64,000 nucleotides of DNA, from positions 257,462-321,461 of IMG/VR virus record IMGVR_UViG_3300023202_000247. One strand, written 5' to 3'. The position numbers and the translations under genes were made by a program. Every line of letters begins with the position of its first letter. Position 1 is the first letter of the stretch. Of the stretch, positions 11,339-33,507 are shown piece after piece. The notes below the pieces were generated by a model, which was not told where the DNA came from, searched no databases, and saw only the letters and a program-made list of their open reading frames with translations.

Positions 11339-14300
11339 TGGCTAATTTGCGTGTCATAAAAGTAGGTGCATCGGACTCCAGAACTATTTTTGCGTCATTT
11401 ACAGACGATCTTGATCCGTTTCTAACCAAAAGTAATGTGACTGTGGAGTCACAAACTGTTGGTGTACCTGATGCTGCGGTTATCTCTCTGGATATCCAAG
11501 AAAACATCATGCGTATAACTACGCAACCAATGACACCAAATGCAGCGTATTTGCTCAAATTTCAAAGCACAGATGGTTCACCGTTCAGAAATGTAAATGG
11601 CACTTCAACACTGTTTCAAGATGGAAAGACAAATGTCTTTTTCATAAGAGGACCGGAAGAGCCTGAGAACTCTATTAGAAACACTCTCATCACATATCTT
11701 TCTCCCAATGAGACTCCATATAACCCAGCGCGTGGAACGCTCATTCGAACTGTTTTGAATGTTTTGAGCACGAATTTTTCACGTGCATTGTTTGATATTC
11801 GTCAAACAAAGAATGAAAGCTATCTCAACGCACGTGTTACTGATGAAAGAAAGGTTCGTGGAAGAGGCCCAACGGATCGTTTGAATCAAGAGGGTGCATT
11901 TGATGTTATTCGTGTGGGCAAAACTCAAACTGATGCAACTATTGATGGAATTTTACAATTTGACAGTTTCCCATTCGATCCGATTACATTGCAGACGGTG
12001 TCCATATCAGCGGAAGATTTGGAGGCCGGTGCCGATGGTGATGCTGGAACTTTTGATCGTTTTGTTTTAACAGTAGATAACGGTCCGATTACCAAGTTAA
12101 AATCTCTTCAAATAGAATACTCTGATGGATATGTTTATCAATATGACATAACTACACTTGGTTATCAGCTAAAAAACCCAAGATATGATACAAAATTTGC
12201 TTCAACATTTGTATTGCTTGATGACAATCAGATAAAGATAAATGAAGATATTTTAGACGATCCTGGTTTCCCACGCATACCCGTGGCTGGCGATACTATG
12301 ACTGTATCGTATGAATACAAAAATCTTGGTATTATTGTTGATGAAGACAGTGTTTCAGTTACAAAGGTTTTGGAGGCCATACGTGAGCCAACACCTGCTT
12401 TGCTAAATGTTTTTAGCTTGGAATTTGCACCAGTGGTAACAAGTTCTGGCAACGTTGCAACTTCTGGCGGCGTTGAATTTTTAGATCCAAATAGCACCAC
12501 GCCATTTTTAACAACTCATCCAGCATTTACAAAAGAAATACCATTTAAGCTCGAAGGGTTACCAAAAGCTATTGGTGAATATGCTGTTGATTATGATAAC
12601 GGTCGTGTATATGTTTACGGAGCAACTTCTGAAAAAGAAGGAACTGGAAACTATCCGCCTGCGGCAACATATAAATACCGAAAGTCTTTTGTTGCAAATT
12701 TAGACTACACGTATGACCCCGAAAGCTTCGAGCTTGTTTCTAGCCCTTTGCGTGATCTAAGCACACAAACGGCTAATATCAACTATGAATATGAAAATAC
12801 GTTAGTTCCTGGAACTGATTTTGAGCCAAAAGTTCATAAAGAAATATTGAATGAAAGAATTGAAAATAGACTTTTAGGAACAAACTCTCTTCAAACCTTG
12901 AATGGTCCAATCACAAATGCATTCAAGGTGTTTAATGAAACAACCAGCGAAGAGTATGGAATTACTAGGTTTAATGATAATAAGGTTTATTTCACATCAA
13001 ATAACTCTCCAAAAATTGTTGATAAGACAGCTGAACGTGTAAACTTTACCAATGTTACAAATGAATCTTTGATTGTCAATAGTGAGTTTAGAAACTCTTC
13101 GAATGTTCGCATTCTAGAAATTCAGCTGCTGAACAACAGGGTAATGTCAATTACGGATGACGTTATAGGAAGCAGCTATAATAGTAGTGTTAGTTTTAGC
13201 AGGAGTGGCATATTCGAACAAGAACTATATTATGATTGGCAGTTATTAACCGTAACTACAAATACTGATAGGTTGACTGTTGGAAAATACCAAGTTGATT
13301 ACAGAAATGGAATAGTATATGTAGGCGTTTCAGAATCCCAAAATTTTGACGTTGGAACTGTCAACTATAAAAAACCTGTAATAAATCCAGTCAATCCTCA
13401 TGTACTTGCTGTAAGTGATATTTATTATAGCACAAATCTAAACCTTGGTCCGACTTTGAGACTAAACTATATCAGCTTTGGTGAAGATGAAATTACACCA
13501 TCGTCATTCAACCTTTCAAATGAAAGATTTTTGAACGGTGATGAAACGATGCAGTATCAAGTTATATCAGATCAAATAACTGTAACTAATGATATACTTG
13601 TTCTTCGTCATCTATACGATGCGTATGATTTAAACAACAATATTGAGCCGGTTAATTTCGCTGATGTTACAACAACCAGTGGCAATGTAATTACTTTGGA
13701 CGGAACTGGTGTTCAAAGGCAAGAAACGTTGGTTGTTGGCGCTGGACTGACGCTGACCACTAGCTTTATAAGTCCTGGAATAAAAATTGGAATGGCGATA
13801 AGTGCCATTAGGGTTTCTGATGGTGCAGAGTTGATTGATGGTTATGAAACTGTAGTTGACAATACCATTACTTTATCTGGAGCAAGTGGCGCTGCTCCTG
13901 GTGATGTTGTAGATTTAATTTACACCGTCATATTGACGGGTGCTGCTACGCCAGTGGTTGATTATGACCGTGGTGGATATTATATAGACTACACGTATCT
14001 TGCAGATGAGATACTGATAACATATGAGTATGGTGACAACTCACTAGATTTTAGTCAAAGTTCTAGTGTAGAAGAGGGTGATGAATACTTTGTTACTTAC
14101 AGATTTGGTGCGCTACGTGATACACTTTTACCAAACTTTGGAAGTTATACTGGTATTCCAGAGGTGTTGGCTTTTGATACCAACCTCAATAGAGAGCGTT
14201 ACAGAGATGCATTGATAGGTATTTTACAATCATTTATCAATGGTCCAACGATTCCATCAATGGAAACACTTGTAAGCAGTATAACTAAAATTGAACCAGA

Positions 14301-17300
14301 GATTTTAGAGAGCATATTTGAGGTATGGTCTCTTGGTATCAGCTATCTTTATAGAGAGCCAATTCGTGTCATAGGCGACCCGGCGTTAGTTCCTGGTAAG
14401 TTTGACAATGGTTTATTGATTAAAGAAGATGGATATGGAGTCACATTCCCGGTTTCTAGCAATTTGAGATTGGAAGAAGGAACGCTTGAATTCTGGGTCA
14501 TTCCTGAGTGGAATGGTTTGGATAATGATGCTACTTTGACATTTAGCAATTTAAAGAAAGATGGCTATGCTGTTTCAGCATCAAATATTTTCATCGGATC
14601 TGGAAGCTATAATCCAACGCTGTCTGATGGTAAGTTTTCGATAAACAGAACGGATGAGTTGAGCCCGGTGGGACTTCCATCTAAGATATTTACAGAAACA
14701 GGATTTTTTATTTATTATGATAGTGATGTTTCTGAGTGGAAAGTCTTAGCAAAAGATAAACCAGATGGCTATACATATAGTGGTCAAATTCTTTCCAGTG
14801 GAGAGGTTTATCATGTTCGCTCTATAGATGGTTTAACTGAGCTTGGTGATGTCATCAGATCCGGTGTAGATAAGATTGATTTTTCTTTTAGTATCGATGC
14901 GTCTGATGCAAGCAGTCCTGATGGATACAAAACTGGAGATGGCTATGTGCCGGGTTACTCATTTGATGGTCTTCAGTTCATGGCAGATGATGTTCACTAC
15001 TTGTTTGATTTTGCGGATAAATCCGACAAAAATAGGTTCAGTGTATTTAAAGATGGCCGCGGTTATATAAATTTCAGAGTTTGGGATCGTGGCGGTGGTT
15101 ACGTTCAAAAAGACACCCGACGTACAGACTACATGGTTAGCGCCGATATTCAAGATTGGCTTGCTGGACAAAAACATCACGTTGCCGTCTCTTGGTCACT
15201 CAACAGCAAAGATCGTAGAGATGAAATGCATCTTTACATAGACGGTTTCGAAGTTCCAAACATATTGTTTTATGGAGGTAGGCCGATTGGTACTACATCT
15301 GATAGGTTCAGAACTGTAAAGCCTGAAATAGTTGCTGGTACTGTTCCAAAAAATGCTGTTACTGGAGATGCTTTGAGTACAACTCAAGGTTCAGCCGTTG
15401 TCTCTACCAATGAATTCAATTTTTCTTCTTTGGGCGTATCGCCCGGAGATACAATTTTAATATTGGAAACAGGATTTACATCTTATACTATTTTGAGCGT
15501 AAGTGGAGGAACATTGACTCTTGATACATCAATGCCTGCAACGCTTGGAGACGCTAGGTTTAGTGTAAATCCATTTACATCAATTGTTTCAACAAACATG
15601 GATATGTTTACCAATGTTGCAGTCTCATACCTGAGAGGTGGGGAAGAGACGGAACTGCCTGGATTGCGGGCTGAACTACCCGGATATTCCATAAACAGAA
15701 ATGCATTGAACCAAAATGTATTAACCATTTTGGGTGATGTTGAAACCGGAGATCAGATTCTCATTCGCACGCTAGGTTTGAATCATCGCAGATGCAGAGA
15801 AGATGTATACATATGGGGCAATACGCAGTCCGTATTGAAAACAGCATTGCCTCCGCCGATAAACTTAGACGAAGTTTCTATCAAGAAGATTGTTTTTCCA
15901 CTTACATCAATTGGACCAGCAAACTCTTCAATTATCGCTGGAGAGTTCGTTGCTACTGGTTTGAGCGCAACTCAACCAACAAACTCGACTGAAGGGCGAC
16001 AGCTTACCGTTAGAGTTACTGGTGGAAATGTAGACTTTACAACTCCTACATCAGTAACAATAAATGGTACGACGGCTGGTGGACCAACGAGTGAGACGTT
16101 GACGTTCTCATCAGCTGAATCTCAAACTACCACTGAAAAATTTCTAACTATTAGTGGTGTTGATGTAACAACTAAGCCGTTGTCAACTTCCAGTGTTGGT
16201 TTGGCAGTAGAAATTAAAGAGACTTATAGTATAACTATGCCAAATGGTAATAGTTCATATCCAGTTATTCGTTTTGCATACAAGACACAGCAAGGTGTTT
16301 CTCTGGAGGGCAACGGTGGTGTGGTAGTTAGCGACCCGAACGGATTTTTCCCGTTGAGCGAAGTTGGTAATTTGATGGTTATCACTTCGCCGCCGGCTGT
16401 CACTGGAACTTATACCATACAAGATAGGCTTGATAATACAACGGTTAGAATATCACCAGCACCGGGCGTGGCATTTAGTGGAGCAGCCTATGAGCTTTAT
16501 AATATAAACATTGGGCGCAGCGGGTTCCAAAACGGATTCTTTTTCCTCAACGAAGCTGGTACGACAAATGATCCATATCCGTTAAGTGAGGGCTTTTATG
16601 AGTTTGATTACCAAGCATACTTGGAAGTTCCATTTGATCCAATTAACCAAGATGCGTATGTTGGAACAGATTTTACCATGTCTCATCCTTCTAAAGCTGT
16701 TATTGATGAATTGAGAATATCAAATTATCAGTTAACAGATACGAGAGTTGGTGAGACTCTTAGCGTTAATGAAGAAAGTGTTACCACTAGCTACCAGTCT
16801 CTAAATCCATTTGTTAAAAATCAAAATACATTGATGTTGCTTCATTTTGATGAATATCCTCTAGAAAATGATAGTGATTTTTACAAGTTTGCAAATCGCG
16901 AATATGTTCAAAGTGGCACGAGTGTAAATGCTAACTTTGATCAATCCATATGTTTTGTTAATAGAGGATTATCATTTGATAATAAGGGGACGCTAACAAC
17001 ACGTAGTGAGGGAACGATAGAATTCTGGGTTAGTCCTCGATTTGATACGTATAACGATCCCGTTCCTCGATTCTACTTTGACGCTATAGCTTCGGTATTG
17101 GAAGAGGTTGTAAGTACTACGACAGGAATGGTAAAAGTTTCTGGTAGAATCGGAGAAGTTTTAAGTGTTCGATTGCAGTCTGACGAACAAAATCAGGGCG
17201 AGGAATACTTTGATGGCGGCAGTGTTGTTGATGATAGACAAACGATAATATTGAAGCGAGCATTGCCTTATCAAAGAACACCTGTAAAAGTTGCGTATGT

Positions 17301-18018
17301 TCCAACCGGTGTAAAGGGAGACAGGATTAGTATACTGAAAGATTCGTCTGGTTTCATTGCATTCAACGTTCGCGCCAACGAACAAGAGTTTCAGGTTAGA
17401 ACACCTGTGTTTTGGCCACGTGATACGTGGCACAGAGTACGTGCCACTTTCAAATTCAATAGACCAGACAATTTGGATCAGATTAGATTGTTTGTTGATG
17501 GAGAAGAGCGCGGAATATTAACATTTGGAAGCGGAATTCTTTTCGGCGGGGGCGCTATTTTTGGACAAACAACCGTTGGAGTTACCAATCAAATCTTGAT
17601 AACTAATATTGATTTTACGGATACTATGACTAGATATCACATTGGTCAAGATTTCACCGGATCGAATGTCGCTGAAGCTAGAATGGATAATTTCCGTCTC
17701 AGCAACATATCCAGGGATCCGATTACAATTGCTGGTCAACCATTTGATACAAATTACTCTTCCAATAACAATGTAGTATTTCCTGTCATAGAGGATGCTT
17801 TTACGACATTTTTGCTCAATTTTGATAGATTGATTGAAAAAGTTGATGATTTTGCTATATTAAGAGATGAGAACTTTGGTATATTCAACTTCACTTTAAA
17901 TATCATTGATTCTTTCCGCATACTTCTAGATAACCCGCGTTCAGAAGAAATATTGCGTTCAGCTATAAATAGGTTGAAACCAGCAAATGCAAAGGTCGAA
18001 ATCAACATAGTTAGATAA
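11338..18018 (+). CDS. Giant baseplate wedge protein (gp7/P2 gpI-like scaffold) with Ig-like and two LamG/ConA-like domains
   Basis: RERYRDAL...GPTIPSM (gpI-like), terminal LKPAN; LamG motifs EGTLEFWV, HHVAVSW, HLYIDG, IDELRISN and EGTIEFWV, WHRVRATF, RLFVDG, MDNFRLSN. Confidence 0.65.
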   Translation: MANLRVIKVGASDSRTIFASFTDDLDPFLTKSNVTVESQTVGVPDAAVISLDIQENIMRITTQPMTPNAAYLLKFQSTDGSPFRNVNGTSTLFQDGKTNVFFIRGPEEPENSIRNTLITYLSPNETPYNPARGTLIRTVLNVLSTNFSRALFDIRQTKNESYLNARVTDERKVRGRGPTDRLNQEGAFDVIRVGKTQTDATIDGILQFDSFPFDPITLQTVSISAEDLEAGADGDAGTFDRFVLTVDNGPITKLKSLQIEYSDGYVYQYDITTLGYQLKNPRYDTKFASTFVLLDDNQIKINEDILDDPGFPRIPVAGDTMTVSYEYKNLGIIVDEDSVSVTKVLEAIREPTPALLNVFSLEFAPVVTSSGNVATSGGVEFLDPNSTTPFLTTHPAFTKEIPFKLEGLPKAIGEYAVDYDNGRVYVYGATSEKEGTGNYPPAATYKYRKSFVANLDYTYDPESFELVSSPLRDLSTQTANINYEYENTLVPGTDFEPKVHKEILNERIENRLLGTNSLQTLNGPITNAFKVFNETTSEEYGITRFNDNKVYFTSNNSPKIVDKTAERVNFTNVTNESLIVNSEFRNSSNVRILEIQLLNNRVMSITDDVIGSSYNSSVSFSRSGIFEQELYYDWQLLTVTTNTDRLTVGKYQVDYRNGIVYVGVSESQNFDVGTVNYKKPVINPVNPHVLAVSDIYYSTNLNLGPTLRLNYISFGEDEITPSSFNLSNERFLNGDETMQYQVISDQITVTNDILVLRHLYDAYDLNNNIEPVNFADVTTTSGNVITLDGTGVQRQETLVVGAGLTLTTSFISPGIKIGMAISAIRVSDGAELIDGYETVVDNTITLSGASGAAPGDVVDLIYTVILTGAATPVVDYDRGGYYIDYTYLADEILITYEYGDNSLDFSQSSSVEEGDEYFVTYRFGALRDTLLPNFGSYTGIPEVLAFDTNLNRERYRDALIGILQSFINGPTIPSMETLVSSITKIEPEILESIFEVWSLGISYLYREPIRVIGDPALVPGKFDNGLLIKEDGYGVTFPVSSNLRLEEGTLEFWVIPEWNGLDNDATLTFSNLKKDGYAVSASNIFIGSGSYNPTLSDGKFSINRTDELSPVGLPSKIFTETGFFIYYDSDVSEWKVLAKDKPDGYTYSGQILSSGEVYHVRSIDGLTELGDVIRSGVDKIDFSFSIDASDASSPDGYKTGDGYVPGYSFDGLQFMADDVHYLFDFADKSDKNRFSVFKDGRGYINFRVWDRGGGYVQKDTRRTDYMVSADIQDWLAGQKHHVAVSWSLNSKDRRDEMHLYIDGFEVPNILFYGGRPIGTTSDRFRTVKPEIVAGTVPKNAVTGDALSTTQGSAVVSTNEFNFSSLGVSPGDTILILETGFTSYTILSVSGGTLTLDTSMPATLGDARFSVNPFTSIVSTNMDMFTNVAVSYLRGGEETELPGLRAELPGYSINRNALNQNVLTILGDVETGDQILIRTLGLNHRRCREDVYIWGNTQSVLKTALPPPINLDEVSIKKIVFPLTSIGPANSSIIAGEFVATGLSATQPTNSTEGRQLTVRVTGGNVDFTTPTSVTINGTTAGGPTSETLTFSSAESQTTTEKFLTISGVDVTTKPLSTSSVGLAVEIKETYSITMPNGNSSYPVIRFAYKTQQGVSLEGNGGVVVSDPNGFFPLSEVGNLMVITSPPAVTGTYTIQDRLDNTTVRISPAPGVAFSGAAYELYNINIGRSGFQNGFFFLNEAGTTNDPYPLSEGFYEFDYQAYLEVPFDPINQDAYVGTDFTMSHPSKAVIDELRISNYQLTDTRVGETLSVNEESVTTSYQSLNPFVKNQNTLMLLHFDEYPLENDSDFYKFANREYVQSGTSVNANFDQSICFVNRGLSFDNKGTLTTRSEGTIEFWVSPRFDTYNDPVPRFYFDAIASVLEEVVSTTTGMVKVSGRIGEVLSVRLQSDEQNQGEEYFDGGSVVDDRQTIILKRALPYQRTPVKVAYVPTGVKGDRISILKDSSGFIAFNVRANEQEFQVRTPVFWPRDTWHRVRATFKFNRPDNLDQIRLFVDGEERGILTFGSGILFGGGAIFGQTTVGVTNQILITNIDFTDTMTRYHIGQDFTGSNVAEARMDNFRLSNISRDPITIAGQPFDTNYSSNNNVVFPVIEDAFTTFLLNFDRLIEKVDDFAILRDENFGIFNFTLNIIDSFRILLDNPRSEEILRSAINRLKPANAKVEINIVR

Positions 18019-18020
18019 TT

Positions 18021-20945
18021 ATGACTAAAAGAATACCAGTATCAACAACAGAAGTTTTGTGGCACGATGCTCAGCGCGTTGATCGCGGTGACATGAATAC
18101 CGAGCAACTAAGCAAAAACCAAAATGACGCATCTATAATCAATAATCATTTTGGCTCAGGGGTATTGCCTTCAACTCCCATACAAACAGTTTTATTCGAT
18201 TCTGATAATTTAAGCCAAATTCAAGCAGCAACTCTTGCCGCTGGTGATTTTGATGGTACCGGCTTTCAACCGGCCCAACAGCCAAGTGATAACAGTCTTG
18301 GCAATCAGCTAGAGGTTGAGCTTACGGGAAGTAGTGTTTTTGGAAGGCTTAGTGTAAAAGTTTTAATAGTTGGTGTAGACTTTGATGGTAATCCCCAATA
18401 TGATAGATTTGTTTTTCATAGAAATGAAAAGCAAGTTACTGGAAAACACTATGCAAGAATTTTAGGATTGTTTTTCAATGACTTTAAAGGAAACAATAAT
18501 TGTTCTCGTAATCAAGGTGGTCGAATAGTCATTCGTGAAGCTGCAAGTTTTCAGCTGAGCAGAGACCCGATAATGGTAGCTCAAGATGTGGAGCCAAACC
18601 TTTTCTTTAGAGATTTCAAGGTTCCGAATCCATCGGTAACGTTGTATAATACCATTCAAACTGGTATAGGTTCTGAATACAGTGTTGACTCTCTTGATAT
18701 AAATACTACAGTTAAAGTAAATAGAATTTTATCAGCTGGAGATGTAACAACTAAAATTGGACAAAAATTTCAAGCTGTTACAAACAACATTCAAAAAATC
18801 ACGCTGTTGTTGGGTGCTCAAAGAGATGATGCTGCTAGTGTAGAAAACCGTTATAATTGGGCCGGGCAGCTTGTAATTAGTGTTTATGAGTTACAAACCA
18901 GTGTTAGTTGTCCAACAGATATAAGCCCAGAGTTACAAATAGAATTTGATCCAACTGCAAACCCAATTGCACAGATAAGTGTAAGTCAATCGGAGTTACG
19001 TGCACTTGGGTATGTTTTAACTGATGTTCTACAACCAGTAGATTTCGTTTTCAGTGATACGCAACTGGGTTCAACAACAAATCCGATAATAGTTCCAAAT
19101 AGATATTACGCTGTTACCATAAACCGAGCCGGGGCGGCATCATCGGGAGCGGTATTTACCGGTGTTGGAAACGATGTATTAGACAATAGTAGACTTACGA
19201 CATATTCTGGTACATGGGTTGATGTTGTTGAAGAAGATATGTGGTTCCAGGTTTGGGATGACGCTGCTAAGGTGGCTGATGGTCAAGCTTATGATTGTGG
19301 TAATGGTATGGAAATTTCCAAGACCATTGAAAACGATCTTGGTGCCGAGATAGATTATTCGTTTGATGATAACGCTTTTGTTGATAGCGGTGAAGGCATC
19401 TTAAATATAGCAGTTGTTGAGGCTATACAAGAAGAAAGTGTTGAAGAGCAAGACGAACGTACTGGAAATCCAGTTAACTCTAGGCAAAAATTCGAACCAA
19501 GCTTTAGCTTTGTAACTGAGTCTGGTTTAGCTACGTTGCGAGAAACCACCGAACCGTTGATTATCGGGTGTGGTGAAGACATCAATCCAAAGCAAAATAC
19601 TGATTTGGAAAAGATGCAACTTTTGCCAGGTCTTGCAAAGGGAGATACGTTTACAGTAGTTAATCCTGATGCTGATTTATTGTCTAACAACTTGGTTGGA
19701 AGCAAGCTCATTCCGAACAACGGCTGTGCTGCAAAAGAATACAGGATATTCAAAGTCATATCTTGTACGGATGGATATGGTGATGTAAATGGTGATGGAT
19801 ACATTAACGACGCAGATATATCTAGAGTGGCAGAGCTTATTGGAGAAAGCGTATATTCAGCATCAACTCAACAAAAGATAGTTGACGGTTACATCAGCAC
19901 ACTAGAGTTGTTGAGGGCCGATGTAGATGGTGATGGATACATTACATCAACAGATGTATCTTTGATTACACAATATGTAAATAGAGATATCAATGCGTTT
20001 CCAGTTGGTTCTACGTTCCAACACATGGATATTCGTGTCCAGCAATCAATTGGAAGAAATGATGGTTATTTTGATTGTGATGGATACATAAGACTTGACG
20101 GTTATCTTGGTCAAAATATCGTTTCGCCAAGCTCTTTGGATCCATATGAGTTGATTTATGATGGATACATAACTACACCAAGTATCGACGGTGATGATCC
20201 TATATTTAGCACAGTGCCATTTCCAGGTGTAACATATGAAATTCTAGCACAACCATTTTGGCAAGATTACTTTTTGCCGTTTAGTAGTGATGTTCGAGTT
20301 GTACCAGCGGCGTTTACGTTTGACGAATCAGTTGTGATACCAGACTGCTCTCCACCCTCATTCTTCTCTTGTTTTGACAGGGCGAGTGTGGATCTGGACT
20401 GTGAGCCTGGACGAAATGACATTCTCATACCAGACAATTTGATAATGCGTCGAGGGCAAATTCTCAACCCTGATGGAACACATTACAAAGTCGATTTCGA
20501 GTTAAAGACAATAATATTGCAATTGCCAGAAGTACCATTTGAAGAGCAGAGTATAAATGTGTTTGGCAAGTTGGTTGCTGATGCTGGTGACGGCAGAACG
20601 TCCGCCGGTTATGATGCTGCAAGATTTGCCGACTGTACGACGGTAAAACCTGATGCATTAGCAAAAAATCAGGTAAGGTTTGGCGTCTCGGTTCAAGCTT
20701 TCGTACCGAATCTTGATGGATACGATTCGGATGGGTATGGTGTTATCGTAGATGACATAATCGGCGTTTACATGGATCAGGTAAATGGAATTTTGACACT
20801 GTCAATTCAAGATTTAGAAGTTGATGATATTTACAGAACTCTTGTTACAAAGATTGAAATTCAAGTATTTTTGAAAAAGGCTGGCTGGAATAACAGCGTG
20901 CTCACCATCGAGCCGAGCCAGGTGCCTGGATTGTTGAGTACATAG
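18021..20945 (+). CDS. Virion protein with a dockerin type I-like paired EF-hand domain
   Basis: GDVNGDGYINDAD and ADVDGDGYITSTD loops each followed by a helix; N-terminal LWHDAQRVDRGDMNTEQ resembles the start of baseplate/tail proteins. Confidence 0.6.
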   Translation: MTKRIPVSTTEVLWHDAQRVDRGDMNTEQLSKNQNDASIINNHFGSGVLPSTPIQTVLFDSDNLSQIQAATLAAGDFDGTGFQPAQQPSDNSLGNQLEVELTGSSVFGRLSVKVLIVGVDFDGNPQYDRFVFHRNEKQVTGKHYARILGLFFNDFKGNNNCSRNQGGRIVIREAASFQLSRDPIMVAQDVEPNLFFRDFKVPNPSVTLYNTIQTGIGSEYSVDSLDINTTVKVNRILSAGDVTTKIGQKFQAVTNNIQKITLLLGAQRDDAASVENRYNWAGQLVISVYELQTSVSCPTDISPELQIEFDPTANPIAQISVSQSELRALGYVLTDVLQPVDFVFSDTQLGSTTNPIIVPNRYYAVTINRAGAASSGAVFTGVGNDVLDNSRLTTYSGTWVDVVEEDMWFQVWDDAAKVADGQAYDCGNGMEISKTIENDLGAEIDYSFDDNAFVDSGEGILNIAVVEAIQEESVEEQDERTGNPVNSRQKFEPSFSFVTESGLATLRETTEPLIIGCGEDINPKQNTDLEKMQLLPGLAKGDTFTVVNPDADLLSNNLVGSKLIPNNGCAAKEYRIFKVISCTDGYGDVNGDGYINDADISRVAELIGESVYSASTQQKIVDGYISTLELLRADVDGDGYITSTDVSLITQYVNRDINAFPVGSTFQHMDIRVQQSIGRNDGYFDCDGYIRLDGYLGQNIVSPSSLDPYELIYDGYITTPSIDGDDPIFSTVPFPGVTYEILAQPFWQDYFLPFSSDVRVVPAAFTFDESVVIPDCSPPSFFSCFDRASVDLDCEPGRNDILIPDNLIMRRGQILNPDGTHYKVDFELKTIILQLPEVPFEEQSINVFGKLVADAGDGRTSAGYDAARFADCTTVKPDALAKNQVRFGVSVQAFVPNLDGYDSDGYGVIVDDIIGVYMDQVNGILTLSIQDLEVDDIYRTLVTKIEIQVFLKKAGWNNSVLTIEPSQVPGLLST

Positions 20946-21505
20946 TGGCAATGATATCAATACCGGTTTCTAGCGATGTTGGAAAATTGTTTAGAGGATT
21001 GGATGTTCCCGGTAATCGGGATCCATCTGATCACATCACGATGTTCTATTTTGACAAAGAGCTTCCGATAAAAAAGTTAGTAAAAGCAGTATCAATAATT
21101 TATGAAGTTTTATTGGAACAAGAGCCATTTTCTGTTTGTACCAAAAAAGTAAAATCTTTTCCAAAAGGAAAAGATGGGTATCCAATCATAGTAGAAATAG
21201 ACTCTAAAGAGCTGGTAAAATTAAGAAACAAAATGGCAAAAGCTTTAGATGCTAACAAAATTAGATACTCTAAAAAGTTTCCTGTATATTCTCCACATTT
21301 AACTTTGAGCTATAGTAAAGAAGACATCAAAAGTTTTGATTTAGATGTTAGCTGGCTCGTTAATGAAATTAAACTATATGGTGGCGATAGATACCGTGAA
21401 AGATTGTTGGTTAGTTTTCCCTTGATAATAAAAAGTATGGAAAAAAAGGCAGCATATGCAAATATGTTAGCTGACATTTGGATTAATGAAATCAATCGAG
21501 TTTGA
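20945..21505 (+). CDS. 2H phosphoesterase (2'-5' RNA ligase superfamily; Acb1/T4 gp57B-like)
   Basis: Two HxT motifs: DHITMFY and YSPHLTLSY. Confidence 0.8.
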   Translation: MAMISIPVSSDVGKLFRGLDVPGNRDPSDHITMFYFDKELPIKKLVKAVSIIYEVLLEQEPFSVCTKKVKSFPKGKDGYPIIVEIDSKELVKLRNKMAKALDANKIRYSKKFPVYSPHLTLSYSKEDIKSFDLDVSWLVNEIKLYGGDRYRERLLVSFPLIIKSMEKKAAYANMLADIWINEINRV

Positions 21506-21529: not shown

Positions 21530-22684
21530 ATGAAAGTCAAAATACAAGGATTTCTTGGTACCAATCATAGTTGGAGTATAGTTCAGCAAAATATAGCTCG
21601 TGGTTTGCTAGCTAATGGCCATGATGTACATTTACAGTCAACTAATGGTTATGATAAATTTCCAAAAGATTTAGAGCCATATAAAAGGCGTGTCTTAGAA
21701 AAAGAATATGATATGCAGTTATCTTATACTGCAATGAAAAACTTTCACGCCTATTTGAGTAATGGTCAAAAAAATCGTTTTGGCATTTGGAATTTTGAGA
21801 GCACGGTATTACCAAAAGGTTTTGCCAAGTATCATAAGTTTGCAGATAAAATGTTGCCATCATCTGAGTTTGCAAAGAGTGTTTTTGTCAGAAATGGTGT
21901 TCCAGATGATAAGTTGGTTGTTATTCCGCATGGTATCAATGTAGAAGAGTATTCTACTGATGATGTTTATCAGTTGCAAACTGATAAGAAAACAAAGATA
22001 CTTACTAACATAGCTCAACCACATGTTCGCAAAAACCTTCCTGGTTTGTTTGAAGCTTATGGTATGGCATTTGATAAAAACGATGATGTATGCTTAGTTG
22101 CAAAAGTATCGGTGAAAAATTTTGATAATAACCATCAAAAGTCATTCAAAAACAGACGCGCTCAAAAAAGAGCGCAGCCAAAAGATAAAAATGATATTCA
22201 ATACTTTGATGTTGACTTTTGGAAAATATATAAGTCTTTCAAAAACAAATTTCCTAATCATGCTGAAGTTGAAATCATAACGGATTTTTTACCAACTATG
22301 GCTCCATTGTATAATGCAACCGACATAGTTTATTCCATGACGCATGCTGAATGCTTTTGGCTTCCTGGTTTAGAGGCTCTTGCAACGGATAATTTAGTAA
22401 TTGCTCCTCGTTATGGTGGGCAGCTTGACTTTTTGAACGATGAAAATTCTCTTTTAGTCGAGGGGAAGATTGTTCGAGCACCTAGAAACATGCAGTATTG
22501 GGTACCAAGCCCTTACGCTGAAATGTTCGAACCATCACTTGATGATGCCGCTGATAAGCTAAAACAAGCAGTATCACAATATGATGTTCTCATGAAAGAC
22601 TTTCGCCCAAAAATGAAGGAACAAACTGATAGGTTGACATGGAAAAATGTTGCTCGTATGATATTGGATTTGTGTGATGAGTAA
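21530..22684 (+). CDS. Glycosyltransferase, GT4 (GT-B fold)
   Basis: PSSEFAKSVF, VIPHGIN, RKNLPGLFEAY, ECFWLPGLEALA...GGQLDFL. Confidence 0.9.
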   Translation: MKVKIQGFLGTNHSWSIVQQNIARGLLANGHDVHLQSTNGYDKFPKDLEPYKRRVLEKEYDMQLSYTAMKNFHAYLSNGQKNRFGIWNFESTVLPKGFAKYHKFADKMLPSSEFAKSVFVRNGVPDDKLVVIPHGINVEEYSTDDVYQLQTDKKTKILTNIAQPHVRKNLPGLFEAYGMAFDKNDDVCLVAKVSVKNFDNNHQKSFKNRRAQKRAQPKDKNDIQYFDVDFWKIYKSFKNKFPNHAEVEIITDFLPTMAPLYNATDIVYSMTHAECFWLPGLEALATDNLVIAPRYGGQLDFLNDENSLLVEGKIVRAPRNMQYWVPSPYAEMFEPSLDDAADKLKQAVSQYDVLMKDFRPKMKEQTDRLTWKNVARMILDLCDE

Positions 22685-22955
22685 AAAGAAATCAAAAGTT
22701 TTACAAAAGCAAGAGTTACTGTATTATGCTTTGGAATCGGAAACGGGATACTCTTCTAATACACGTGAAATTTTCAAATCCATTGACTCTAGCTTTTTGG
22801 AGCGAAAATTGAAGGAAGGAAGTTGCCTTCTCGTTCCTGCCATGGAAGAGGTTTTTGACAAGAAAATACCATATGAGCGTGGCAATTTTGAAGAAGGTCG
22901 ATTAAAATGGGTGGAGTATCTGAATGATATCAATAGTAATACCAGTTCTAAATAA
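22674..22955 (+). CDS. Hypothetical protein
   Basis: 93-aa ORF overlapping both neighbours in the operon. Confidence 0.5.
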   Translation: MMSKKKSKVLQKQELLYYALESETGYSSNTREIFKSIDSSFLERKLKEGSCLLVPAMEEVFDKKIPYERGNFEEGRLKWVEYLNDINSNTSSK

Positions 22956-23625
22956 TTGGAATTTTACCAAAGCTTGCTTGCAAGACCTTCAAAAATTAAC
23001 GGTTCCAAATGAAATCATTGTTGTTGACAATGGTAGTGATGATAAAACTACACAGGAAATTGTGAATTTTGAAGGTATAATACATCATCGTTTTGAAGAA
23101 AACACTGGGTTTGCTCATGCTTGCAACAAAGGATTTACGATTACCAAAGGTAAATATGTGTTGTTTTTAAACAATGATGTTCGTGTTCGTTCTCAACATT
23201 CCAACTGGGTTGAGCCGCTGATGAAAGCAGCTGATGGGCGAAAGCTCGTGGGTCCGACAGTTGGCGTCCTTACCAATGACTTCAATTTTGTCAAAGAAAG
23301 TGATTGTTTCATTGGTGATGACTATCAGTATTATATGAGTGGTTGGAATTTGACTGCTCTACGCTCTGTATTTGAAGACTTAACCTTGGAAGAATATGAT
23401 GGGCCTTTTACCGAGGAGATGGGCAAGGCTTATTTTGAGGATACTGATTTGGGTTTTCGAGCGCGAGAACGAGGCATTGGTTTCGAGATTGTGAACGTAC
23501 CCGTTCACCACTTTGGCAAAATGACCAGTAAAAAGCTAAATACTTTATCATTGTATCAACCTGCAAAAATGAAATTCATACAAAAATGGAAAAACCGAGC
23601 TGGAAATATTACCTTAAAACACTGA
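22924..23625 (+). CDS. Glycosyltransferase, GT2
   Basis: ISIVIPVLN, IIVVDNGSDD, NTGFAHACNKG, VLFLNNDV, YFEDTDLGFR. Confidence 0.9.
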   Translation: MISIVIPVLNNWNFTKACLQDLQKLTVPNEIIVVDNGSDDKTTQEIVNFEGIIHHRFEENTGFAHACNKGFTITKGKYVLFLNNDVRVRSQHSNWVEPLMKAADGRKLVGPTVGVLTNDFNFVKESDCFIGDDYQYYMSGWNLTALRSVFEDLTLEEYDGPFTEEMGKAYFEDTDLGFRARERGIGFEIVNVPVHHFGKMTSKKLNTLSLYQPAKMKFIQKWKNRAGNITLKH

Positions 23626-23792
23626 TAGTAGTAGCCATAGTATTGATTCTACCATACATATCAGTGTTATTTACTTTTGCCATTACAACATTTTTTGGTG
23701 CTAGTGCCATTGTTTGCATCAAACTTTCGTTATTTGTCGGTATTACAGTTGCAATATTGCTTGGATTTTTAATCATAAAAGGACAATTATGA
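23586..23792 (+). CDS. Small two-TM membrane protein
   Basis: 68 aa with two hydrophobic stretches; ATGA-type overlap with next gene. Confidence 0.45.
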   Translation: MEKPSWKYYLKTLIVVAIVLILPYISVLFTFAITTFFGASAIVCIKLSLFVGITVAILLGFLIIKGQL

Positions 23793-24580
23793 AGATTCAT
23801 GTGTTAACACTAACCTGGAATGCTCTTAATAAATTGCGTGCAAATAGCGAACACTTGTTTATCGCCATGAATGATTTTGATTGGACATGGCATTTGAGAG
23901 ATAATGGTTCCAAGGATGAAACCGTGGCTGAATTCTCTGATAAGCAAAACGTATGTTTATACGATATTGGACATAATCGTGATACGTTTGCAATGGGCAT
24001 GAATTATCTATTTAAAAAAGCATCGCCGGCTAAAGATGATGTGCTATTACTATTGAACAATGATGTTTCTGTTGGACGAGAAAGTATCAAGCAAATGCAT
24101 TCTCTCATGACAAAAACAAAAGCAGATGTTGTTGGTTGTCGTTTGTTGTATAATGGTACAAACAAACTTCAACATGCTGGAGTTATCTTTGGACCCAGGT
24201 ATAACAATTTACCATTTCATTTTCGGCCAGGAGAAGTTTCCGACTCGAATGCTGAAAAGGACCGTTATTTTCAAGCCGTTACAGCTGCTTGTTGTTTGGT
24301 AAAGGCATCTGCGTGGGAAGCAGTTGGAGGTATGGATGAAGATTTCAAATGGGCTTTTGATGACGTAACACTTTGTTTGAGTATAAAAAACAATGGAGGT
24401 AAAATTGCCTATTGTGGCAAAACCAAGTCATTCCATGAAGAGAGCGCATCTTTAAAGAAAAATCCCGTAAATAAGATGTTCATTCAGCATAATGTATCAA
24501 AGTTTAAAGAAAAATGGTCTGGTCGTTATGATATAGATCATGATAAATATCTAAAAGATTCTAACTATAATGTAATATGA
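23789..24580 (+). CDS. Glycosyltransferase, GT2
   Basis: Start refined to ATG 23789 after AAAGGA; RDNGSKD, LLLLNND, LQHAGV, AVTAAC, GGMDEDF...FDDV. Confidence 0.9.
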   Translation: MKIHVLTLTWNALNKLRANSEHLFIAMNDFDWTWHLRDNGSKDETVAEFSDKQNVCLYDIGHNRDTFAMGMNYLFKKASPAKDDVLLLLNNDVSVGRESIKQMHSLMTKTKADVVGCRLLYNGTNKLQHAGVIFGPRYNNLPFHFRPGEVSDSNAEKDRYFQAVTAACCLVKASAWEAVGGMDEDFKWAFDDVTLCLSIKNNGGKIAYCGKTKSFHEESASLKKNPVNKMFIQHNVSKFKEKWSGRYDIDHDKYLKDSNYNVI

Positions 24581-25488
24581 TTATCAGTACTAAATACTTT
24601 CCATTTTCTCCAGGAATACCGTGGAAGATGCGTAAAGGAAAGTATTTGATTCCAGAAATTGAACAGGGTGTTTGGGAACGTGCTGTTAAAAATAAAGATG
24701 GAGTTGTGCTTTGCTATGGTGGCTTTCTAGAGAGTTTATTTTCTTTAGCATATGGTGAGATGCTGGTGCGCGTAAAGCCTCAGATGAAACTGTTTTGGGC
24801 CGGCAATCCAGCATTTCATGCAATGATAAAAGAGCATGGGTTATTCAAACCAATAGATTTTCCAAATATTAGTCATAAATATCCCGTGCCTTTATTTATG
24901 AATGATCATTTTGTGTATTTTAACTGCTTGAATAATTATTTGATTAGGTCACCATGGTATGGTGAGCCGAAAAAAATTAATAGAAACTTGATATCCAAAC
25001 AGTTATTTTGCAATTCATTGGTTGAATGGTCGTCACGATATGTTCCAAATATTCGTCATGGCTCTGATAAAACTGGAAAGTATGTACTCATAATACTAAA
25101 TGAGCACAATCACGATTTTGACACATTAAATTGGGATTGGCAATATGTTAGAGAATTTGCATCCATGATGCATGGCTCGATACCAGTTGTTGTAATGGCT
25201 GAAAAAGATATGCCTCACTACTCTAAACATTATGAGTTTCAAAAATTGCAACAGCATCATATAACACTCAACATGTTAAATAATGCTTGGATGGTTTTGT
25301 CAAACGATGTGCATTTTTTAATAGCTGCAATACTATTACAACGCCCACATATACTATCTTTACCGTTTAAAGATAACAGATTTCACTTGTTAAAAAATGC
25401 AGAATTTTTGGACAATGAGAGCGTTATATTAGTAACTGAAGATTTAAAACCATACTACGTATATCAAATTTGTGAAGGAATGAAATGA
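24577..25488 (+). CDS. Putative glycosyltransferase, degenerate GT9-like
   Basis: GGFLESLFS...RVKPQMKLFW and VLSNDVHFLIAAIL loosely match GT9 motifs; context. Confidence 0.4.
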   Translation: MIISTKYFPFSPGIPWKMRKGKYLIPEIEQGVWERAVKNKDGVVLCYGGFLESLFSLAYGEMLVRVKPQMKLFWAGNPAFHAMIKEHGLFKPIDFPNISHKYPVPLFMNDHFVYFNCLNNYLIRSPWYGEPKKINRNLISKQLFCNSLVEWSSRYVPNIRHGSDKTGKYVLIILNEHNHDFDTLNWDWQYVREFASMMHGSIPVVVMAEKDMPHYSKHYEFQKLQQHHITLNMLNNAWMVLSNDVHFLIAAILLQRPHILSLPFKDNRFHLLKNAEFLDNESVILVTEDLKPYYVYQICEGMK

Positions 25489-26243
25489 GTCAAGAAGAAG
25501 CAACAATAATGATGGTAACATATAATCGATTAGAACTTACTAAAAGGATGTTGGATTCATTGTTTCAAAAAACAAAATATCCATTTAACATTGTTATCGT
25601 TGATAATGGTTCTACAGATGGAACCGTTGAATTTTTAACTGATTATTTTGAAAACAGCAAAGCTGATGTTGTTGCAGCTACACTCTTCTTTAATAATAAA
25701 AACAAAGGAATAGCTGTTGGTCGTAATCAAGCTATGAAAATTGCTGATGAAAATTTTCCAAACACAAAGTGGTATTGTACGATAGACAATGATGTAGAGT
25801 TACCATCTGGTTGGCTTACCGAATGTATAGACATCATGTCGAAAAATCCAAAGTATGGAATGATTGGTGTCAATATGGAGACCAAACCATACCCACTCGT
25901 TACTAAAAATGGAAAGACATTTCAAAATAAACCAGCGGGAAACCTGGGAACAGCATGCATGGTATTTCCAAAATCCATACACCAAATGCTCGGGTTTTTC
26001 AATACAGAATATGGTTTGTATGGAGAAGAAGATGCTGATTGGGGTATGAGGGGACGAGTGCTCGGAATTTCCATGGGTTATGTTGAAGAGATGGGAAATC
26101 ATTTTGGCGTAGGAGAAAATGATCAGGGTGAATATCGAGAGTGGAAGACTGAAAAACATAGTGAAAACTTAACGCAGTTTAATCAAAATTGCGCGGCATA
26201 CGCTTCCAAGCACAAGCAACTTTACATTCCATACAAGGAGTAA
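25485..26243 (+). CDS. Glycosyltransferase, GT2
   Basis: IMMVTYNR, VIVDNGSTDGT, NKGIAVGRNQ, TIDND, YGEEDADWG. Confidence 0.9.
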   Translation: MSQEEATIMMVTYNRLELTKRMLDSLFQKTKYPFNIVIVDNGSTDGTVEFLTDYFENSKADVVAATLFFNNKNKGIAVGRNQAMKIADENFPNTKWYCTIDNDVELPSGWLTECIDIMSKNPKYGMIGVNMETKPYPLVTKNGKTFQNKPAGNLGTACMVFPKSIHQMLGFFNTEYGLYGEEDADWGMRGRVLGISMGYVEEMGNHFGVGENDQGEYREWKTEKHSENLTQFNQNCAAYASKHKQLYIPYKE

Positions 26244-26244
26244 C

Positions 26245-29273: not shown

Positions 29274-29279
29274 CTATTT

Positions 29280-29288
29280 GATATATAA
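29280..29288. promoter_or_regulatory. Putative bidirectional late promoter core (GATATATAA)
   Basis: Centre of a 21-bp gap between divergent ATGs at 29273(-) and 29295(+). Confidence 0.5.
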
Positions 29289-29294
29289 CTAGTT

Positions 29295-31137: not shown

Positions 31138-31138
31138 A

Positions 31139-32847: not shown

Positions 32848-32853
32848 ATTGAG

Positions 32854-32861
32854 TATATATA
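32854..32861. promoter_or_regulatory. Putative bidirectional late promoter core (TATATATA)
   Basis: Lies within a 16-bp gap between divergent ATGs at 32847(-) and 32864(+). Confidence 0.5.
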
Positions 32862-32863
32862 CC

Positions 32864-33505: not shown

Positions 33506-33507
33506 AA

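What the first reader, a model, noticed from the sequence alone, without database searches (positions are those of the whole stretch)
19770..20738. DGY tripeptide strongly enriched in virion proteins and absent from the enzymes: possible modification sequon
Seen (counted by eye): DGY occurs 10 times in the last ~325 aa of the 974-aa protein (e.g. NDGYFDCDGYIRLDGYLG, LDGYDSDGYG), 7 times in the 2226-aa wedge protein (e.g. PDGYKTGDGYVPGY), 3 times in 3824-5905, 3 times in 61638-62528 (TDGYITDGYL) and twice in the 62532 ORF, 25 in total. I found none in the 21.5-59.4 kb enzyme/replication block although DG dipeptides are common there. Chance expectation is well under one per 1000 aa. Inference: with GTs and sulfotransferases next door, DGY could be an acceptor motif for Tyr O-glycosylation (known in some S-layer proteins) or Tyr sulfation (which favours acidic neighbours). 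Alternatives are a Ca2+-binding or beta-turn motif, or a protease/chaperone tag.
Basis: partly seen in the sequence, partly recalled or inferred. Interest (0 to 1): 0.78.

Follow-up and report, generated by a model that had tools for sequence, protein, structure and literature searches.

The report
DGY motif on outer virion proteins
In a clade of uncultured giant phages, the tripeptide Asp-Gly-Tyr is about 12 times too frequent in outer tail, baseplate and fibre proteins, and in the relatives examined the excess occurs only where one glycosyltransferase gene is present, so it may be an attachment site for sugars on the virus particle; this has not been shown directly.

Summary
All five counts are exact (10, 7, 3, 3, 2); one further DGY in the 2H-phosphoesterase ORF was missed. 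The window is the last 64 kb of a 321-kb jumbo phage. Its virion block holds 53 DGY against 4.2 expected. The rest of the genome holds 12 against 11.5, which is chance level, not depletion.

The selection acts on the protein:
- 53 sites are in frame and 4 are not.
- Each residue is specific: DGF, DGW, NGY and EGY show no excess.
- Flanks of different sites are unrelated.

In more than 150 related phage loci, DGY is both the most conserved tripeptide and the one most often gained anew. In two AlphaFold models the sites lie in loops.

DGY excess tracks one gene, the GT4-family glycosyltransferase just downstream of the fibre gene. One relative keeps only this GT and has 24 DGY against 1.2 expected. 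Three lineages without it, and Bacillus phage G, show none.

Best reading (about 0.45): DGY is an acceptor motif for virion glycosylation started by this GT.

Caveats:
- There is no chemical evidence.
- Two sites are ordinary dockerin Ca2+ loops.
- One lineage has the GT but no DGY excess.
- The sulfotransferase calls are sub-threshold.

The parts
18021..20945 (+). 974-aa baseplate/fibre protein with 10 DGY, at residues 584, 592, 622, 638, 681, 687, 693, 714, 899 and 904
   Evidence: One search gives the counts. The AlphaFold model has pLDDT 89.3. Foldseek matches a phi812 baseplate chain at E = 8.6e-7. The family has 213 representatives carrying 300 DGY against 21.7 expected.
19770..20738 (+). 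The DGY-dense stretch given in the finding, running from the first DGY codon triplet to the last in the 974-aa protein
   Evidence: In the model the D-G of every site lies in a loop or turn. Seven of these columns are conserved in 10-13 of 15 homologues.
19776..19982 (+). Type I dockerin domain (residues 586-654). DGY 592 and 638 are its two Ca2+-binding loops (DxNxDGY and DxDxDGY).
   Evidence: Pfam PF00404 at E = 3.5e-10, 40.4 bits against a cut-off of 22.9. A PDB profile search hits dockerins. Foldseek matches 4uyp_B with TM 0.75.
11338..18018 (+). 2226-aa baseplate wedge/fibre protein with 7 DGY, at residues 263, 834, 1031, 1075, 1143, 1195 and 1201
   Evidence: Its 14 homologues carry 3-8 DGY each. 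There is a variable DGY hot spot around residues 1143-1201.
3824..5905 (+). 693-aa virion-block protein with 3 DGY, at residues 437, 613 and 629
   Evidence: It has no Pfam or PHROG match.
61638..62528 (+). 296-aa protein with 3 DGY, at residues 175, 192 and 197 (TDGYITDGYL)
62532..64000 (+). Gly-rich ORF that runs off the end of the window, with 2 DGY at residues 73 and 330
21530..22684 (+). 384-aa GT4-family (GT-B) glycosyltransferase, the gene whose presence tracks the DGY excess across relatives
   Evidence: Pfam Glyco_transf_4 at 31.6 bits against a cut-off of 28.5. The C-terminal GT1-type motif matches PDB entries. Homologues lie in 133 of the 166 related loci searched, most of them just downstream of the fibre gene.
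22924..45226 (.). Variable glycan-biosynthesis locus. It holds four GT2, one GT11, one GT1-like, a methyltransferase, a hexapeptide acyltransferase, PhyH, WbqC, a DegT aminotransferase, GDP-mannose 4,6-dehydratase, two epimerases/reductases, and two weak sulfotransferase-like ORFs (32104-32865 on the minus strand; 40172-40807).
   Evidence: The content differs between relatives and is absent in L059 apart from the GT4.
20945..21505 (+). 186-aa 2H phosphoesterase/Acb1-like protein with one DGY (residue 77). The site is not shared by the 3 homologues found, so it counts as a chance occurrence.

Best explanation
DGY is a self-sufficient three-residue motif that selection keeps, and repeatedly re-creates, on loops of the outward-facing virion proteins of this phage clade. 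Those proteins are the sheath insertion domain, the baseplate wedge, the fibres and a 1728-aa protein.

The most likely function is as the acceptor site of a phage-encoded, cytoplasmic protein glycosyltransferase. This is the GT4-family enzyme encoded directly after the fibre gene (21530-22684). I infer that it puts a first sugar on the tyrosine hydroxyl, and that the variable glycosyltransferases and sugar-nucleotide enzymes downstream extend it into a lineage-specific glycan coat.

Shown: the enrichment, its residue specificity, its independence of flanking sequence, its loop position, its evolutionary turnover, and its co-occurrence with the GT4 gene.

Inferred: that a covalent modification exists, that Tyr is the modified atom, and that the GT4 enzyme is the initiating transferase.
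For: 1. Size and specificity. There are 53 DGY against 4.2 expected in the virion block, and chance level elsewhere. Of 189 DG, 53 are followed by Y, while DGF is 7 against 8.9 expected and DGW is 0. Of 85 GY, 53 are preceded by D, while NGY is 2 against 5.6 and EGY is 1. In relative L059, 24 of 26 GY are DGY.

2. Protein level, not DNA. The pattern GAYGGNTAY occurs 53 times in frame and 4 times out of frame or antisense, with ordinary codon use.

3. Not a repeated domain. The flanks of the 53 sites are no more alike than the flanks of DG[^Y] sites: mean 1.57 against 1.55 identities in 24, maximum 6.

4. Evolution. In 15 homologue sets, DGY has 11 conserved columns (the next tripeptide has 4). 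It also has 40 sporadic columns against 7.9 expected, the highest ratio of any tripeptide. Inserted tandem copies occur. DGY is 2.6-fold over-represented in lineage-specific insertions, P = 5e-6.

5. Context rules resemble those of a sequon. There is no Pro at +1 in 405 non-redundant contexts, and K, R and H are depleted nearby.

6. Only some virion proteins carry it, consistently across relatives. The sheath, wedge, fibre and 1728-aa families do. The 1653-aa, 742-aa, 321-aa and 207-aa families carry none and baseplate-J almost none (0.1 per homologue), across 11-25 homologues each.

7. Position in the models. All 10 sites of the fibre model and the 3 sheath sites have their D-G in a loop or turn.

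8. Coupling to the GT4 gene.
- No locus with a DGY excess whose contig reaches far enough lacks a GT4 orthologue.
- L059 keeps only this one GT between the fibre and tubulin genes and has 24 DGY against 1.2 expected.
- Loci without the orthologue have no excess: L054 has 1 in 4600 aa, L055 has 0 in 1957, P0055 has 0 in 1286 and L126 has 0 in 1061.
- These lie in at least two separate places of the fibre tree, next to GT4-bearing sisters.
- They have also lost the deeply conserved sites 899 and 904.
- Bacillus phage G is the nearest cultured relative (major capsid protein 55% identical). It has no annotated glycosyltransferase in the ~49 kb after its baseplate genes and 2 DGY against 2.0 expected in 8,953 aa of tail and baseplate proteins.
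Against: - There is no chemical evidence of any modification.
- L181 has a GT4 orthologue but only 1 DGY in 4,925 aa. L048, L107, L121 and L184 have weak excess, 4 against about 1.
- The GT4-less lineages are few, at most three or four, and for two of them only the fibre protein itself could be read.
- Relatedness inflates the co-occurrence counts.
- At least two sites, possibly a tenth of all, are ordinary EF-hand or dockerin Ca2+ loops.
- T4 structural proteins, which are not known to be glycosylated, show a mild excess of 10 against 2.8.
- The GT locus could serve another target, such as DNA or the host envelope.
- The complex prediction of GT4 with a DGY-rich fragment gave no answer.
- Solvent exposure could not be computed.
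Confidence: 0.45

Rival explanations
1. DGY is a structural or Ca2+-binding turn motif and is not modified. The Asp-Gly makes the turn or ligates a cation, and the Tyr packs or hydrogen-bonds to stabilise exposed loops of long beta-rich virion proteins. The link with the GT gene is then shared ancestry.
For: - D-G sits in a loop or turn at every modelled site.
- Sites 592 and 638 are true dockerin Ca2+ loops.
- Several others read DGYI..D/E, like the second half of an EF-hand loop.
- When Y is lost, DG is often kept, as DGV, DGI, DGK or DGT.
- K and R are depleted and D is enriched nearby.
- T4 shows a mild excess without glycosylation.
- L181 keeps the GT without DGY.
Against: - A generic turn would accept Asn for Asp and Phe or Trp for Tyr. 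Neither is enriched.
- Only about 12% of contexts have Asp at -4 or +5, as an EF-hand loop needs.
- The motif appears at non-homologous positions and in inserted tandem copies (DGYDGY, three in a row), which a fold-dependent motif would not do.
- It vanishes, including at deeply conserved sites, in the lineages that lack the GT4 gene even though the protein folds are retained.
Confidence: 0.25
2. DGY is a minimal non-covalent binding site. Asp would hydrogen-bond to sugar hydroxyls and Tyr would stack on the sugar ring, spread over the virion surface to stick weakly to host or environmental polysaccharide, possibly to the glycan made by the phage's own locus.
For: - The motif sits on outer proteins and in loops, with a need for both the Asp carboxylate and the Tyr ring.
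- Tandem copies are 3-8 residues apart, which would give multivalency.
- It co-occurs with a glycan locus.
Against: - A tripeptide without a conserved scaffold is unlikely to form a defined binding pocket.
- Phe or Trp would stack as well as Tyr but are not enriched.
- No lectin-like fold was recognised around the sites.
Confidence: 0.12
3. DGY marks tyrosines for a different modification, such as sulfation by the two small sulfotransferase-like ORFs of the locus, or phosphorylation or nucleotidylation.
For: - The acidic, turn-rich, basic-poor surroundings resemble the known preferences of tyrosine sulfation (my knowledge of TPST site rules).
- ORF 40172-40807 has a P-loop-like GRCGST, an IIKTH motif and a weak match to phenol sulfotransferase SULT1B1.
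- ORF 32104-32865 (minus strand) has an LPRGGTT P-loop.
Against: - Both matches are below the curated cut-offs: 21.3 against 22 bits for one, E = 7.5e-3 for the other.
- No homologue of either ORF was found next to the fibre genes of relatives. L059 keeps a 20-fold DGY excess with none detectable between the fibre and helicase genes.
- Known sulfation sites usually have the acid directly at -1. Here -1 is Gly.
Confidence: 0.07
4. The enrichment is an artefact: chance, amino-acid composition, a DNA-level motif, or copies of one repeated domain.
For: The virion proteins are somewhat richer in D and G than the enzymes.
Against: - P = 4e-39 after composition, and P = 9e-24 after allowing for dipeptides.
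- The pattern is frame-specific.
- The flanks are unrelated.
- The excess is reproduced in more than 150 related loci of 27-68% identity.
Confidence: 0.01

Closest known systems
Virion O-glycosylation of mycobacteriophages (Che8, Corndog, Myrna; Freeman et al. 2023, as summarised in PMC12619734)
   Same: Phage-encoded glycosyltransferases decorate structural proteins in the cytoplasm, proposed as a shield. The major capsid protein here is distantly related to Myrna's, at 28% identity.
   Different: In those phages the glycans sit at the C-termini of the capsid and tail-tube subunits, and no DGY-type motif was described. Here the capsid and tube families carry no DGY, the sites are internal loops of sheath, wedge and fibre proteins, and nothing has been shown chemically.
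Three-residue O-glycosylation sequon of Bacteroidota, D-(S/T)-(A/I/L/V/M/T) (from my own knowledge, not tested here)
   Same: It is a very short motif with an obligatory Asp before a hydroxyl acceptor, and it is scattered over many surface proteins.
   Different: That system transfers a preassembled glycan in the periplasm to Ser or Thr. Here the acceptor would be Tyr two residues after Asp, on proteins that never leave the cytoplasm before lysis. The candidate enzyme is a soluble GT-B transferase.
Tyrosine O-glycosylation of bacterial S-layer proteins (Paenibacillus alvei, Thermoanaerobacter; PMC2943079)
   Same: It involves a Glc- or Gal-to-Tyr linkage on a surface array protein.
   Different: It is carried out by membrane oligosaccharyltransferases at a few sites. 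That review names no consensus motif. It is not a phage system.
Chlorovirus and giant-virus capsid glycosylation by virus-encoded cytoplasmic enzymes (review PMC9614988)
   Same: The virus carries its own sugar-nucleotide and glycosyltransferase genes and uses non-canonical acceptor motifs. The window likewise encodes GDP-mannose dehydratase, epimerases/reductases and many GTs.
   Different: Those are eukaryotic viruses using N-linked Asn sites. No sequence relationship was tested.
EF-hand / DxDxDG and dockerin Ca2+-binding loops
   Same: Sites 592 and 638 are such loops, with DG at loop positions 5-6 and Tyr at position 7.
   Different: Most DGY sites lack the acidic residues at loop positions 1, 3 and 12, and position 7 of these loops has no strict Tyr requirement.

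Membership tests
Type I dockerin (PF00404), for residues 586-654 of the 974-aa protein | Two tandem segments, each a Ca2+ loop (DxNxDGxxxxxD) followed by a helix, scoring above the curated family threshold | tested here: met
   Pfam gives 40.4 bits against a cut-off of 22.9, E = 3.5e-10. A profile search hits solved dockerins. The model has loops followed by helices 597-605 and 643-653. Foldseek matches 4uyp_B with TM 0.75.
Type I dockerin | A cohesin partner that it binds | not tested
   No cohesin search was run in the genome.
EF-hand / DxDxDG Ca2+ loop, as an explanation for all DGY sites | Acidic or amide side chains at loop positions 1 and 3 (that is, -4 and -2 from the DG Asp) and an acidic residue at position 12 (+5 after Tyr) | tested here: not met
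   In 405 non-redundant contexts, Asp at -4 occurs in 50 and Asp at +5 in 48, about 12% each. There is no enrichment at -2. The feature is met only for sites such as 592 and 638.
Generic type I' beta-turn (N/D-G) followed by an aromatic residue | Asn and Asp interchangeable at the first position; Tyr, Phe and Trp interchangeable at the third | tested here: not met
   NGY is 2 against 5.6 expected, DGF is 7 against 8.9, DGW is 0 against 1.7, and DGY is 53 against 6. Almost no DGF or NGY replacements occur at conserved columns: a single NGY, none.
Repeat-domain paralogy (DGY inherited with a duplicated module) | Sequence similarity of the flanks between sites | tested here: not met
   Mean 1.57 identities in 24 flank positions against 1.55 for control DG sites; maximum 6.
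Protein glycosylation sequon with a dedicated transferase | A short motif containing an acceptor side chain, over-represented in the target proteins only | tested here: met
Protein glycosylation sequon with a dedicated transferase | Presence of the motif depends on presence of the transferase gene across lineages | tested here: inconclusive
   A DGY excess always comes with the GT4 orthologue. Loci without it show no excess: L054, L055, P0055/L126 and phage G, at least 2 independent events. However, the GT-less lineages are few, and L181 has the GT without the motif.
Protein glycosylation sequon with a dedicated transferase | Sites lie on solvent-exposed parts of the folded or assembled protein | tested here: inconclusive
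   The sites have a loop or turn position in two models and are enriched in insertions. No coordinates were available to compute accessibility.
Protein glycosylation sequon with a dedicated transferase | A glycan covalently bound to the motif's residue | not testable with these tools
   This needs mass spectrometry. The complex prediction gave no answer.
Tyrosine sulfation site (TPST/RaxST type) | A PAPS-dependent tyrosyl-protein sulfotransferase is encoded | tested here: inconclusive
   There are two sub-threshold sulfotransferase-like ORFs: 21.3 bits against a cut-off of 22, and E = 7.5e-3 covering the P-loop only.
Tyrosine sulfation site (TPST/RaxST type) | The sulfotransferase co-occurs with the motif in relatives | tested here: not met
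   Homologues were found in 0 and 1 of 166 loci within 10 kb, though in the window itself these ORFs lie beyond 10 kb. L059 has none detectable between the fibre and helicase genes yet carries 24 DGY.
GT4 / GT-B glycosyltransferase, for ORF 21530-22684 | Match to the family models above threshold, and the C-terminal nucleotide-sugar-binding motif region | tested here: met
   PF13439 gives 31.6 bits against a cut-off of 28.5. Orthologues carry PF00534/PF13692 hits. Residues 243-314 align to the GT1-family motif of solved enzymes.

The most novel reading that the evidence does not exclude
A widespread clade of uncultured jumbo phages, distant relatives of Bacillus phage G found in freshwater, marine and engineered habitats, coats the outer surface of its tail, baseplate and fibres with glycans. 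These would be attached to tyrosine within a three-residue sequon, Asp-Gly-Tyr, by a phage-encoded cytoplasmic GT4 enzyme. That would be the first sequence-defined glycosylation sequon in a bacterial virus and the first consensus motif for tyrosine O-glycosylation in any system. Lineage-specific elongation enzymes would then give each phage its own glycan coat.
Probability: 0.35. Interest if true: 0.85.

Novelty: new variant of a known kind. Interest (0 to 1): 0.68.

Why it matters
If DGY is an acceptor site, glycosylated proteins and sites in more than a hundred uncultured giant phages could be predicted from sequence alone. A compact enzyme-plus-tag pair (one 384-aa GT and a tripeptide) would become available for testing in E. 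coli. Phage-encoded virion glycosylation, so far shown for a few actinophages, would prove to be a major investment of jumbo phages: here about 24 kb, or 7% of the genome. It would also supply the first consensus for tyrosine O-glycosylation.

If it is not a modification site, the motif still needs explaining. It is an unusually clean example of a three-residue element under strong selection, both conserved and repeatedly re-invented, on the outside of a virus particle.

Tried and rejected
- **DNA-level motif.** Rejected: 53 sites in frame against 4 out of frame or antisense, with ordinary codon use.
- **Repeated domain or paralogy.** Rejected: the flanks are unrelated.
- **General property of phage tail proteins.** Bacillus phage G has 2 against 2.0 expected. 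T4 has 10 against 2.8, scattered as single sites. This is a mild effect, not comparable to the window's.
- **All sites as EF-hand loops.** Rejected for most sites.
- **tblastn of the 974-aa protein against cultured phages.** No match. The sheath matches only in its conserved C-terminal domain.
- **Complex prediction of GT4 with fibre residues 575-730.** 'No answer'; not used as evidence.
- **Sheath AlphaFold model.** Poor overall (pLDDT 58.9). Only the insert domains were used.
- **Solvent accessibility.** Model coordinates are not exposed by the tools, so it was not computed.
- **Close relatives of the GT-less fibres P0055 and L054 in IMG/VR.** None found.
- **An alternative enriched tripeptide in the GT-bearing but DGY-poor L181.** None found.
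- **Literature.** No paper holds 'DGY motif'. No description of such a phage sequon was found. The S-layer review read gives no consensus for Tyr glycosylation. PMC10527164 is not held.
Full report
**What the window is.** The 64-kb window is the last fifth of a single 321,461-bp contig.
- It encodes a baseplate-J protein, very large wedge and fibre proteins, a TubZ/PhuZ-type tubulin, a UvsW-like helicase, and DnaC- and DnaB-like proteins.
- Upstream of the window lie the major head protein (genome 212909-213922) and the tail sheath (genome 245946-248405).
- The head protein is 55% identical to that of Bacillus phage G, the nearest cultured relative. The 974-aa protein has no match in cultured phages.
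- This is therefore an uncultured jumbo myophage. Many relatives exist in IMG/VR and in metagenomes.

**The observation.**
- The coordinates 19770-20738 run from the first to the last DGY codon triplet of the 974-aa protein.
- One DGY in the 2H-phosphoesterase ORF (20945-21505) was missed.
- In the window, virion ORFs hold 25 DGY against 1.7 expected (P = 7e-21). The block 20945-59418 holds 1 against 1.95, which is chance level, not depletion.
- Genome-wide, the virion block (22,561 aa) has 53 against 4.2 expected from composition, or 8.9 given dipeptide frequencies. No other tripeptide comes close. The remaining 77,734 aa have 12 against 11.5.
- More DGY-rich proteins lie upstream of the window: a 1728-aa protein (9), a 534-aa protein (5), the sheath (3) and others.

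**What kind of signal it is.**
- It acts on the protein. The DNA pattern occurs 53 times in the coding frame and 4 times otherwise, with ordinary codon usage.
- All three residues are specific. After DG, Tyr occurs 53 times (6.3 expected), Phe 7 (8.9) and Trp 0. Before GY, Asp occurs 53 times (6.0), Asn 2 (5.6) and Glu 1. This speaks against a generic Asn/Asp-Gly turn followed by any aromatic residue.
- The sites are not copies of a domain. Their flanks are as dissimilar as those of control DG sites.
- Over 405 non-redundant contexts from the phage and its relatives, Pro never follows the Tyr. Lys, Arg and His are depleted nearby. Neighbouring copies sit 3-8 residues apart, most often 6.

**Evolution.**
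- In alignments of the baseplate-J, wedge and 974-aa families (15 phages, 40-68% identity), DGY has 11 columns conserved in at least half of the sequences. The next best tripeptide has 4.
- DGY also has 40 columns present in three or fewer sequences against 7.9 expected, the highest ratio of all tripeptides.
- The sheath sites 174, 181 and 198 are kept in 19-25 of 26 homologues. New sites and inserted tandem copies also appear.
- DGY is 2.6-fold over-represented in lineage-specific insertions.
- The split between families is stable across relatives. The sheath, the 267-aa protein, the 1728-aa protein, the wedge and the fibre carry DGY. The 1653-aa, 742-aa, 321-aa and 207-aa families and all glycosyltransferases carry none or almost none, and baseplate-J averages 0.1 per homologue, over 11-25 homologues each.
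- Among 150 representatives of the fibre family there are 300 DGY against 21.7 expected.

**Structure.**
- The 974-aa protein folds with high confidence (pLDDT 89.3) and resembles baseplate and fibre proteins of phage phi812 and mycobacteriophage Douge.
- Residues 586-654 are a genuine type I dockerin.
- In the model, every one of the ten sites has its Asp-Gly in a loop or turn.
- The sheath model is poor overall but confident for the all-beta insert (residues 70-260), where the three sites lie in loops between strands. The conserved sheath core is residues 643-813.
- From general knowledge of contractile sheaths, such inserts face outward. That is an inference here.

**The neighbouring genes.**
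- The locus 21.5-45.2 kb is a large glycan-biosynthesis cluster.
- 'Sulfotransferases' are only two sub-threshold candidates.
- In Bacillus phage G no glycosyltransferase is annotated in the ~49 kb after the baseplate genes, which reaches the replication-helicase genes.

The first gene of the cluster, a 384-aa GT4-family transferase (21530-22684), has an orthologue directly after the fibre gene in all 14 first relatives and in six further contigs.
- Over the wider surveys its homologues lie in 133 of 166 loci. These surveys cover 80 IMG/VR loci and 77 metagenome loci of a deep, largely marine branch.
- Two apparent exceptions were misses of my ORF caller. In a third the gene lies elsewhere on the contig.
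- The rest of the cluster is variable. In L059 it is reduced to this one GT, followed by tubulin and helicase genes, yet the three baseplate and fibre proteins there hold 24 DGY against 1.2 expected. In that locus 24 of 26 GY are DGY.
- Loci without the orthologue show no excess. L054 has 1 DGY in 4,600 aa. L055 has 0 in 1,957. In the P0055 locus the fibre gene is followed, after one 104-aa ORF, by the UvsW-like helicase, and it has 0 in 1,286. Its relative L126 has 0 in 1,061.
- Bacillus phage G has 2 against 2.0 in 8,953 aa.
- On a quick maximum-likelihood tree of the conserved N-terminal part, P0055 is sister to a GT-bearing, DGY-bearing row. L054 and L055 lie in the other deep clade beside GT-bearing rows. 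That means at least two independent coincidences of 'no GT' with 'no DGY'.
- In these lineages even the deeply conserved sites 899 and 904 are replaced.
- Exceptions in the other direction exist. L181 has the GT but 1 DGY in 4,925 aa and no other enriched tripeptide. L048, L107, L121 and L184 have only about a four-fold excess.

**Interpretation.** The facts to explain are these:
- the tripeptide works without context;
- it needs the Asp carboxylate and the Tyr hydroxyl;
- it avoids a following Pro;
- it sits on loops of outer virion proteins;
- it is both conserved and repeatedly re-invented;
- it disappears where one particular glycosyltransferase gene is missing.

The simplest reading is an acceptor motif for that enzyme, with tyrosine as the likely attachment point and the variable downstream enzymes extending the glycan. 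I put this at about 0.45.
- A purely structural or Ca2+-binding role (0.25) explains the turn position and the dockerin sites. It does not explain the residue specificity, the turnover or the coupling to the GT.
- A non-covalent sugar-binding patch (0.12) and another tyrosine modification such as sulfation (0.07) remain possible.
- Nothing here is chemical evidence, and the complex prediction gave no answer.

**Comparison with what is known.**
- Phage-encoded virion glycosylation is established for some mycobacteriophages. There it is at C-termini of capsid and tube proteins, with no such motif (as summarised in PMC12619734).
- Tyrosine O-glycosylation is known from S-layers. The review I read names no consensus motif (PMC2943079).
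- The Bacteroidota sequon D-(S/T)-(A/I/L/V/M/T) shares the leading Asp but is periplasmic (my own knowledge).
- Giant eukaryotic viruses glycosylate capsids with their own cytoplasmic enzymes at unusual sites (PMC9614988).
- I found no paper mentioning a DGY motif.
- I therefore class the finding as a possible new variant of a known kind of system. It rests on a very solid sequence observation and an unproven mechanism.

Noticed in passing
window 19776-19982 (residues 586-654 of the 974-aa protein): There is a bona fide type I dockerin domain inside a phage baseplate/fibre protein, conserved in relatives. Dockerins normally plug into cohesins, so the partner could be another virion protein or a host surface protein.
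   Followed up: partly
genome 26-77 kb, outside the window (e.g. G000:C1:74768-76096): A multi-copy paralogue family carries a MORN-like repeat (REDGPA.EHADGYKEW). It explains the strongly enriched tripeptides GPA, HRE, KEW and WYL in the non-virion part of the genome, and 6 of the 12 DGY there.
   Followed up: no
window 20945-21505: A 2H phosphoesterase with a sub-threshold match to the anti-CBASS protein Acb1 (25.3 bits against a cut-off of 27) sits between the fibre gene and the glycosyltransferase gene. It is present in only a few relatives.
   Followed up: no
window 45246-46625: A TubZ/PhuZ-like tubulin gene lies directly after the glycan locus, followed by UvsW-like helicase, DnaC-like and DnaB-like genes. 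Relatives keep the same order, with or without the glycan locus in between.
   Followed up: partly
window 40172-40807 and 32104-32865 (minus strand): There are two small, very divergent sulfotransferase-like ORFs with P-loops GRCGST and LPRGGTT. The first likely starts at Met24 and overlaps the preceding ORF. Both score below the curated thresholds.
   Followed up: partly
L001:7909-8922 (genome 212909-213922) and NC_023719.1: The major head protein is 55% identical to that of Bacillus phage G, while tail and fibre proteins are barely or not detectably related. Relative to phage G, the glycan locus looks like an insertion between the baseplate and replication genes.
   Followed up: partly
window 59539-61638 and 62532-64000: Two proteins have about 15-16% glycine. 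The first has no DGY at all and the second has two. They may be fibres of a different construction.
   Followed up: no
window 2908-3822; genome 213982-216048: Endonuclease-like ORFs are embedded in the virion gene block. One matches endonuclease VII/HNH-type PHROGs. The other is a 688-aa endonuclease/methyltransferase-like ORF next to the head gene. They are probably homing elements.
   Followed up: no
L181 (Ga0181377_1000015), L048/L107/L121: These relatives keep the GT4 orthologue after the fibre gene but have little or no DGY excess, and no other tripeptide takes its place. The enzyme may have another target there, or the system may be decaying.
   Followed up: partly
L047 (phage T4, 76-125 kb): T4 structural proteins show a mild DGY excess (10 against 2.8 expected) as isolated sites in gp7, gp8, gp12, gp18 and gp27. 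A weak general preference for DG-Tyr in tail proteins may exist.
   Followed up: partly
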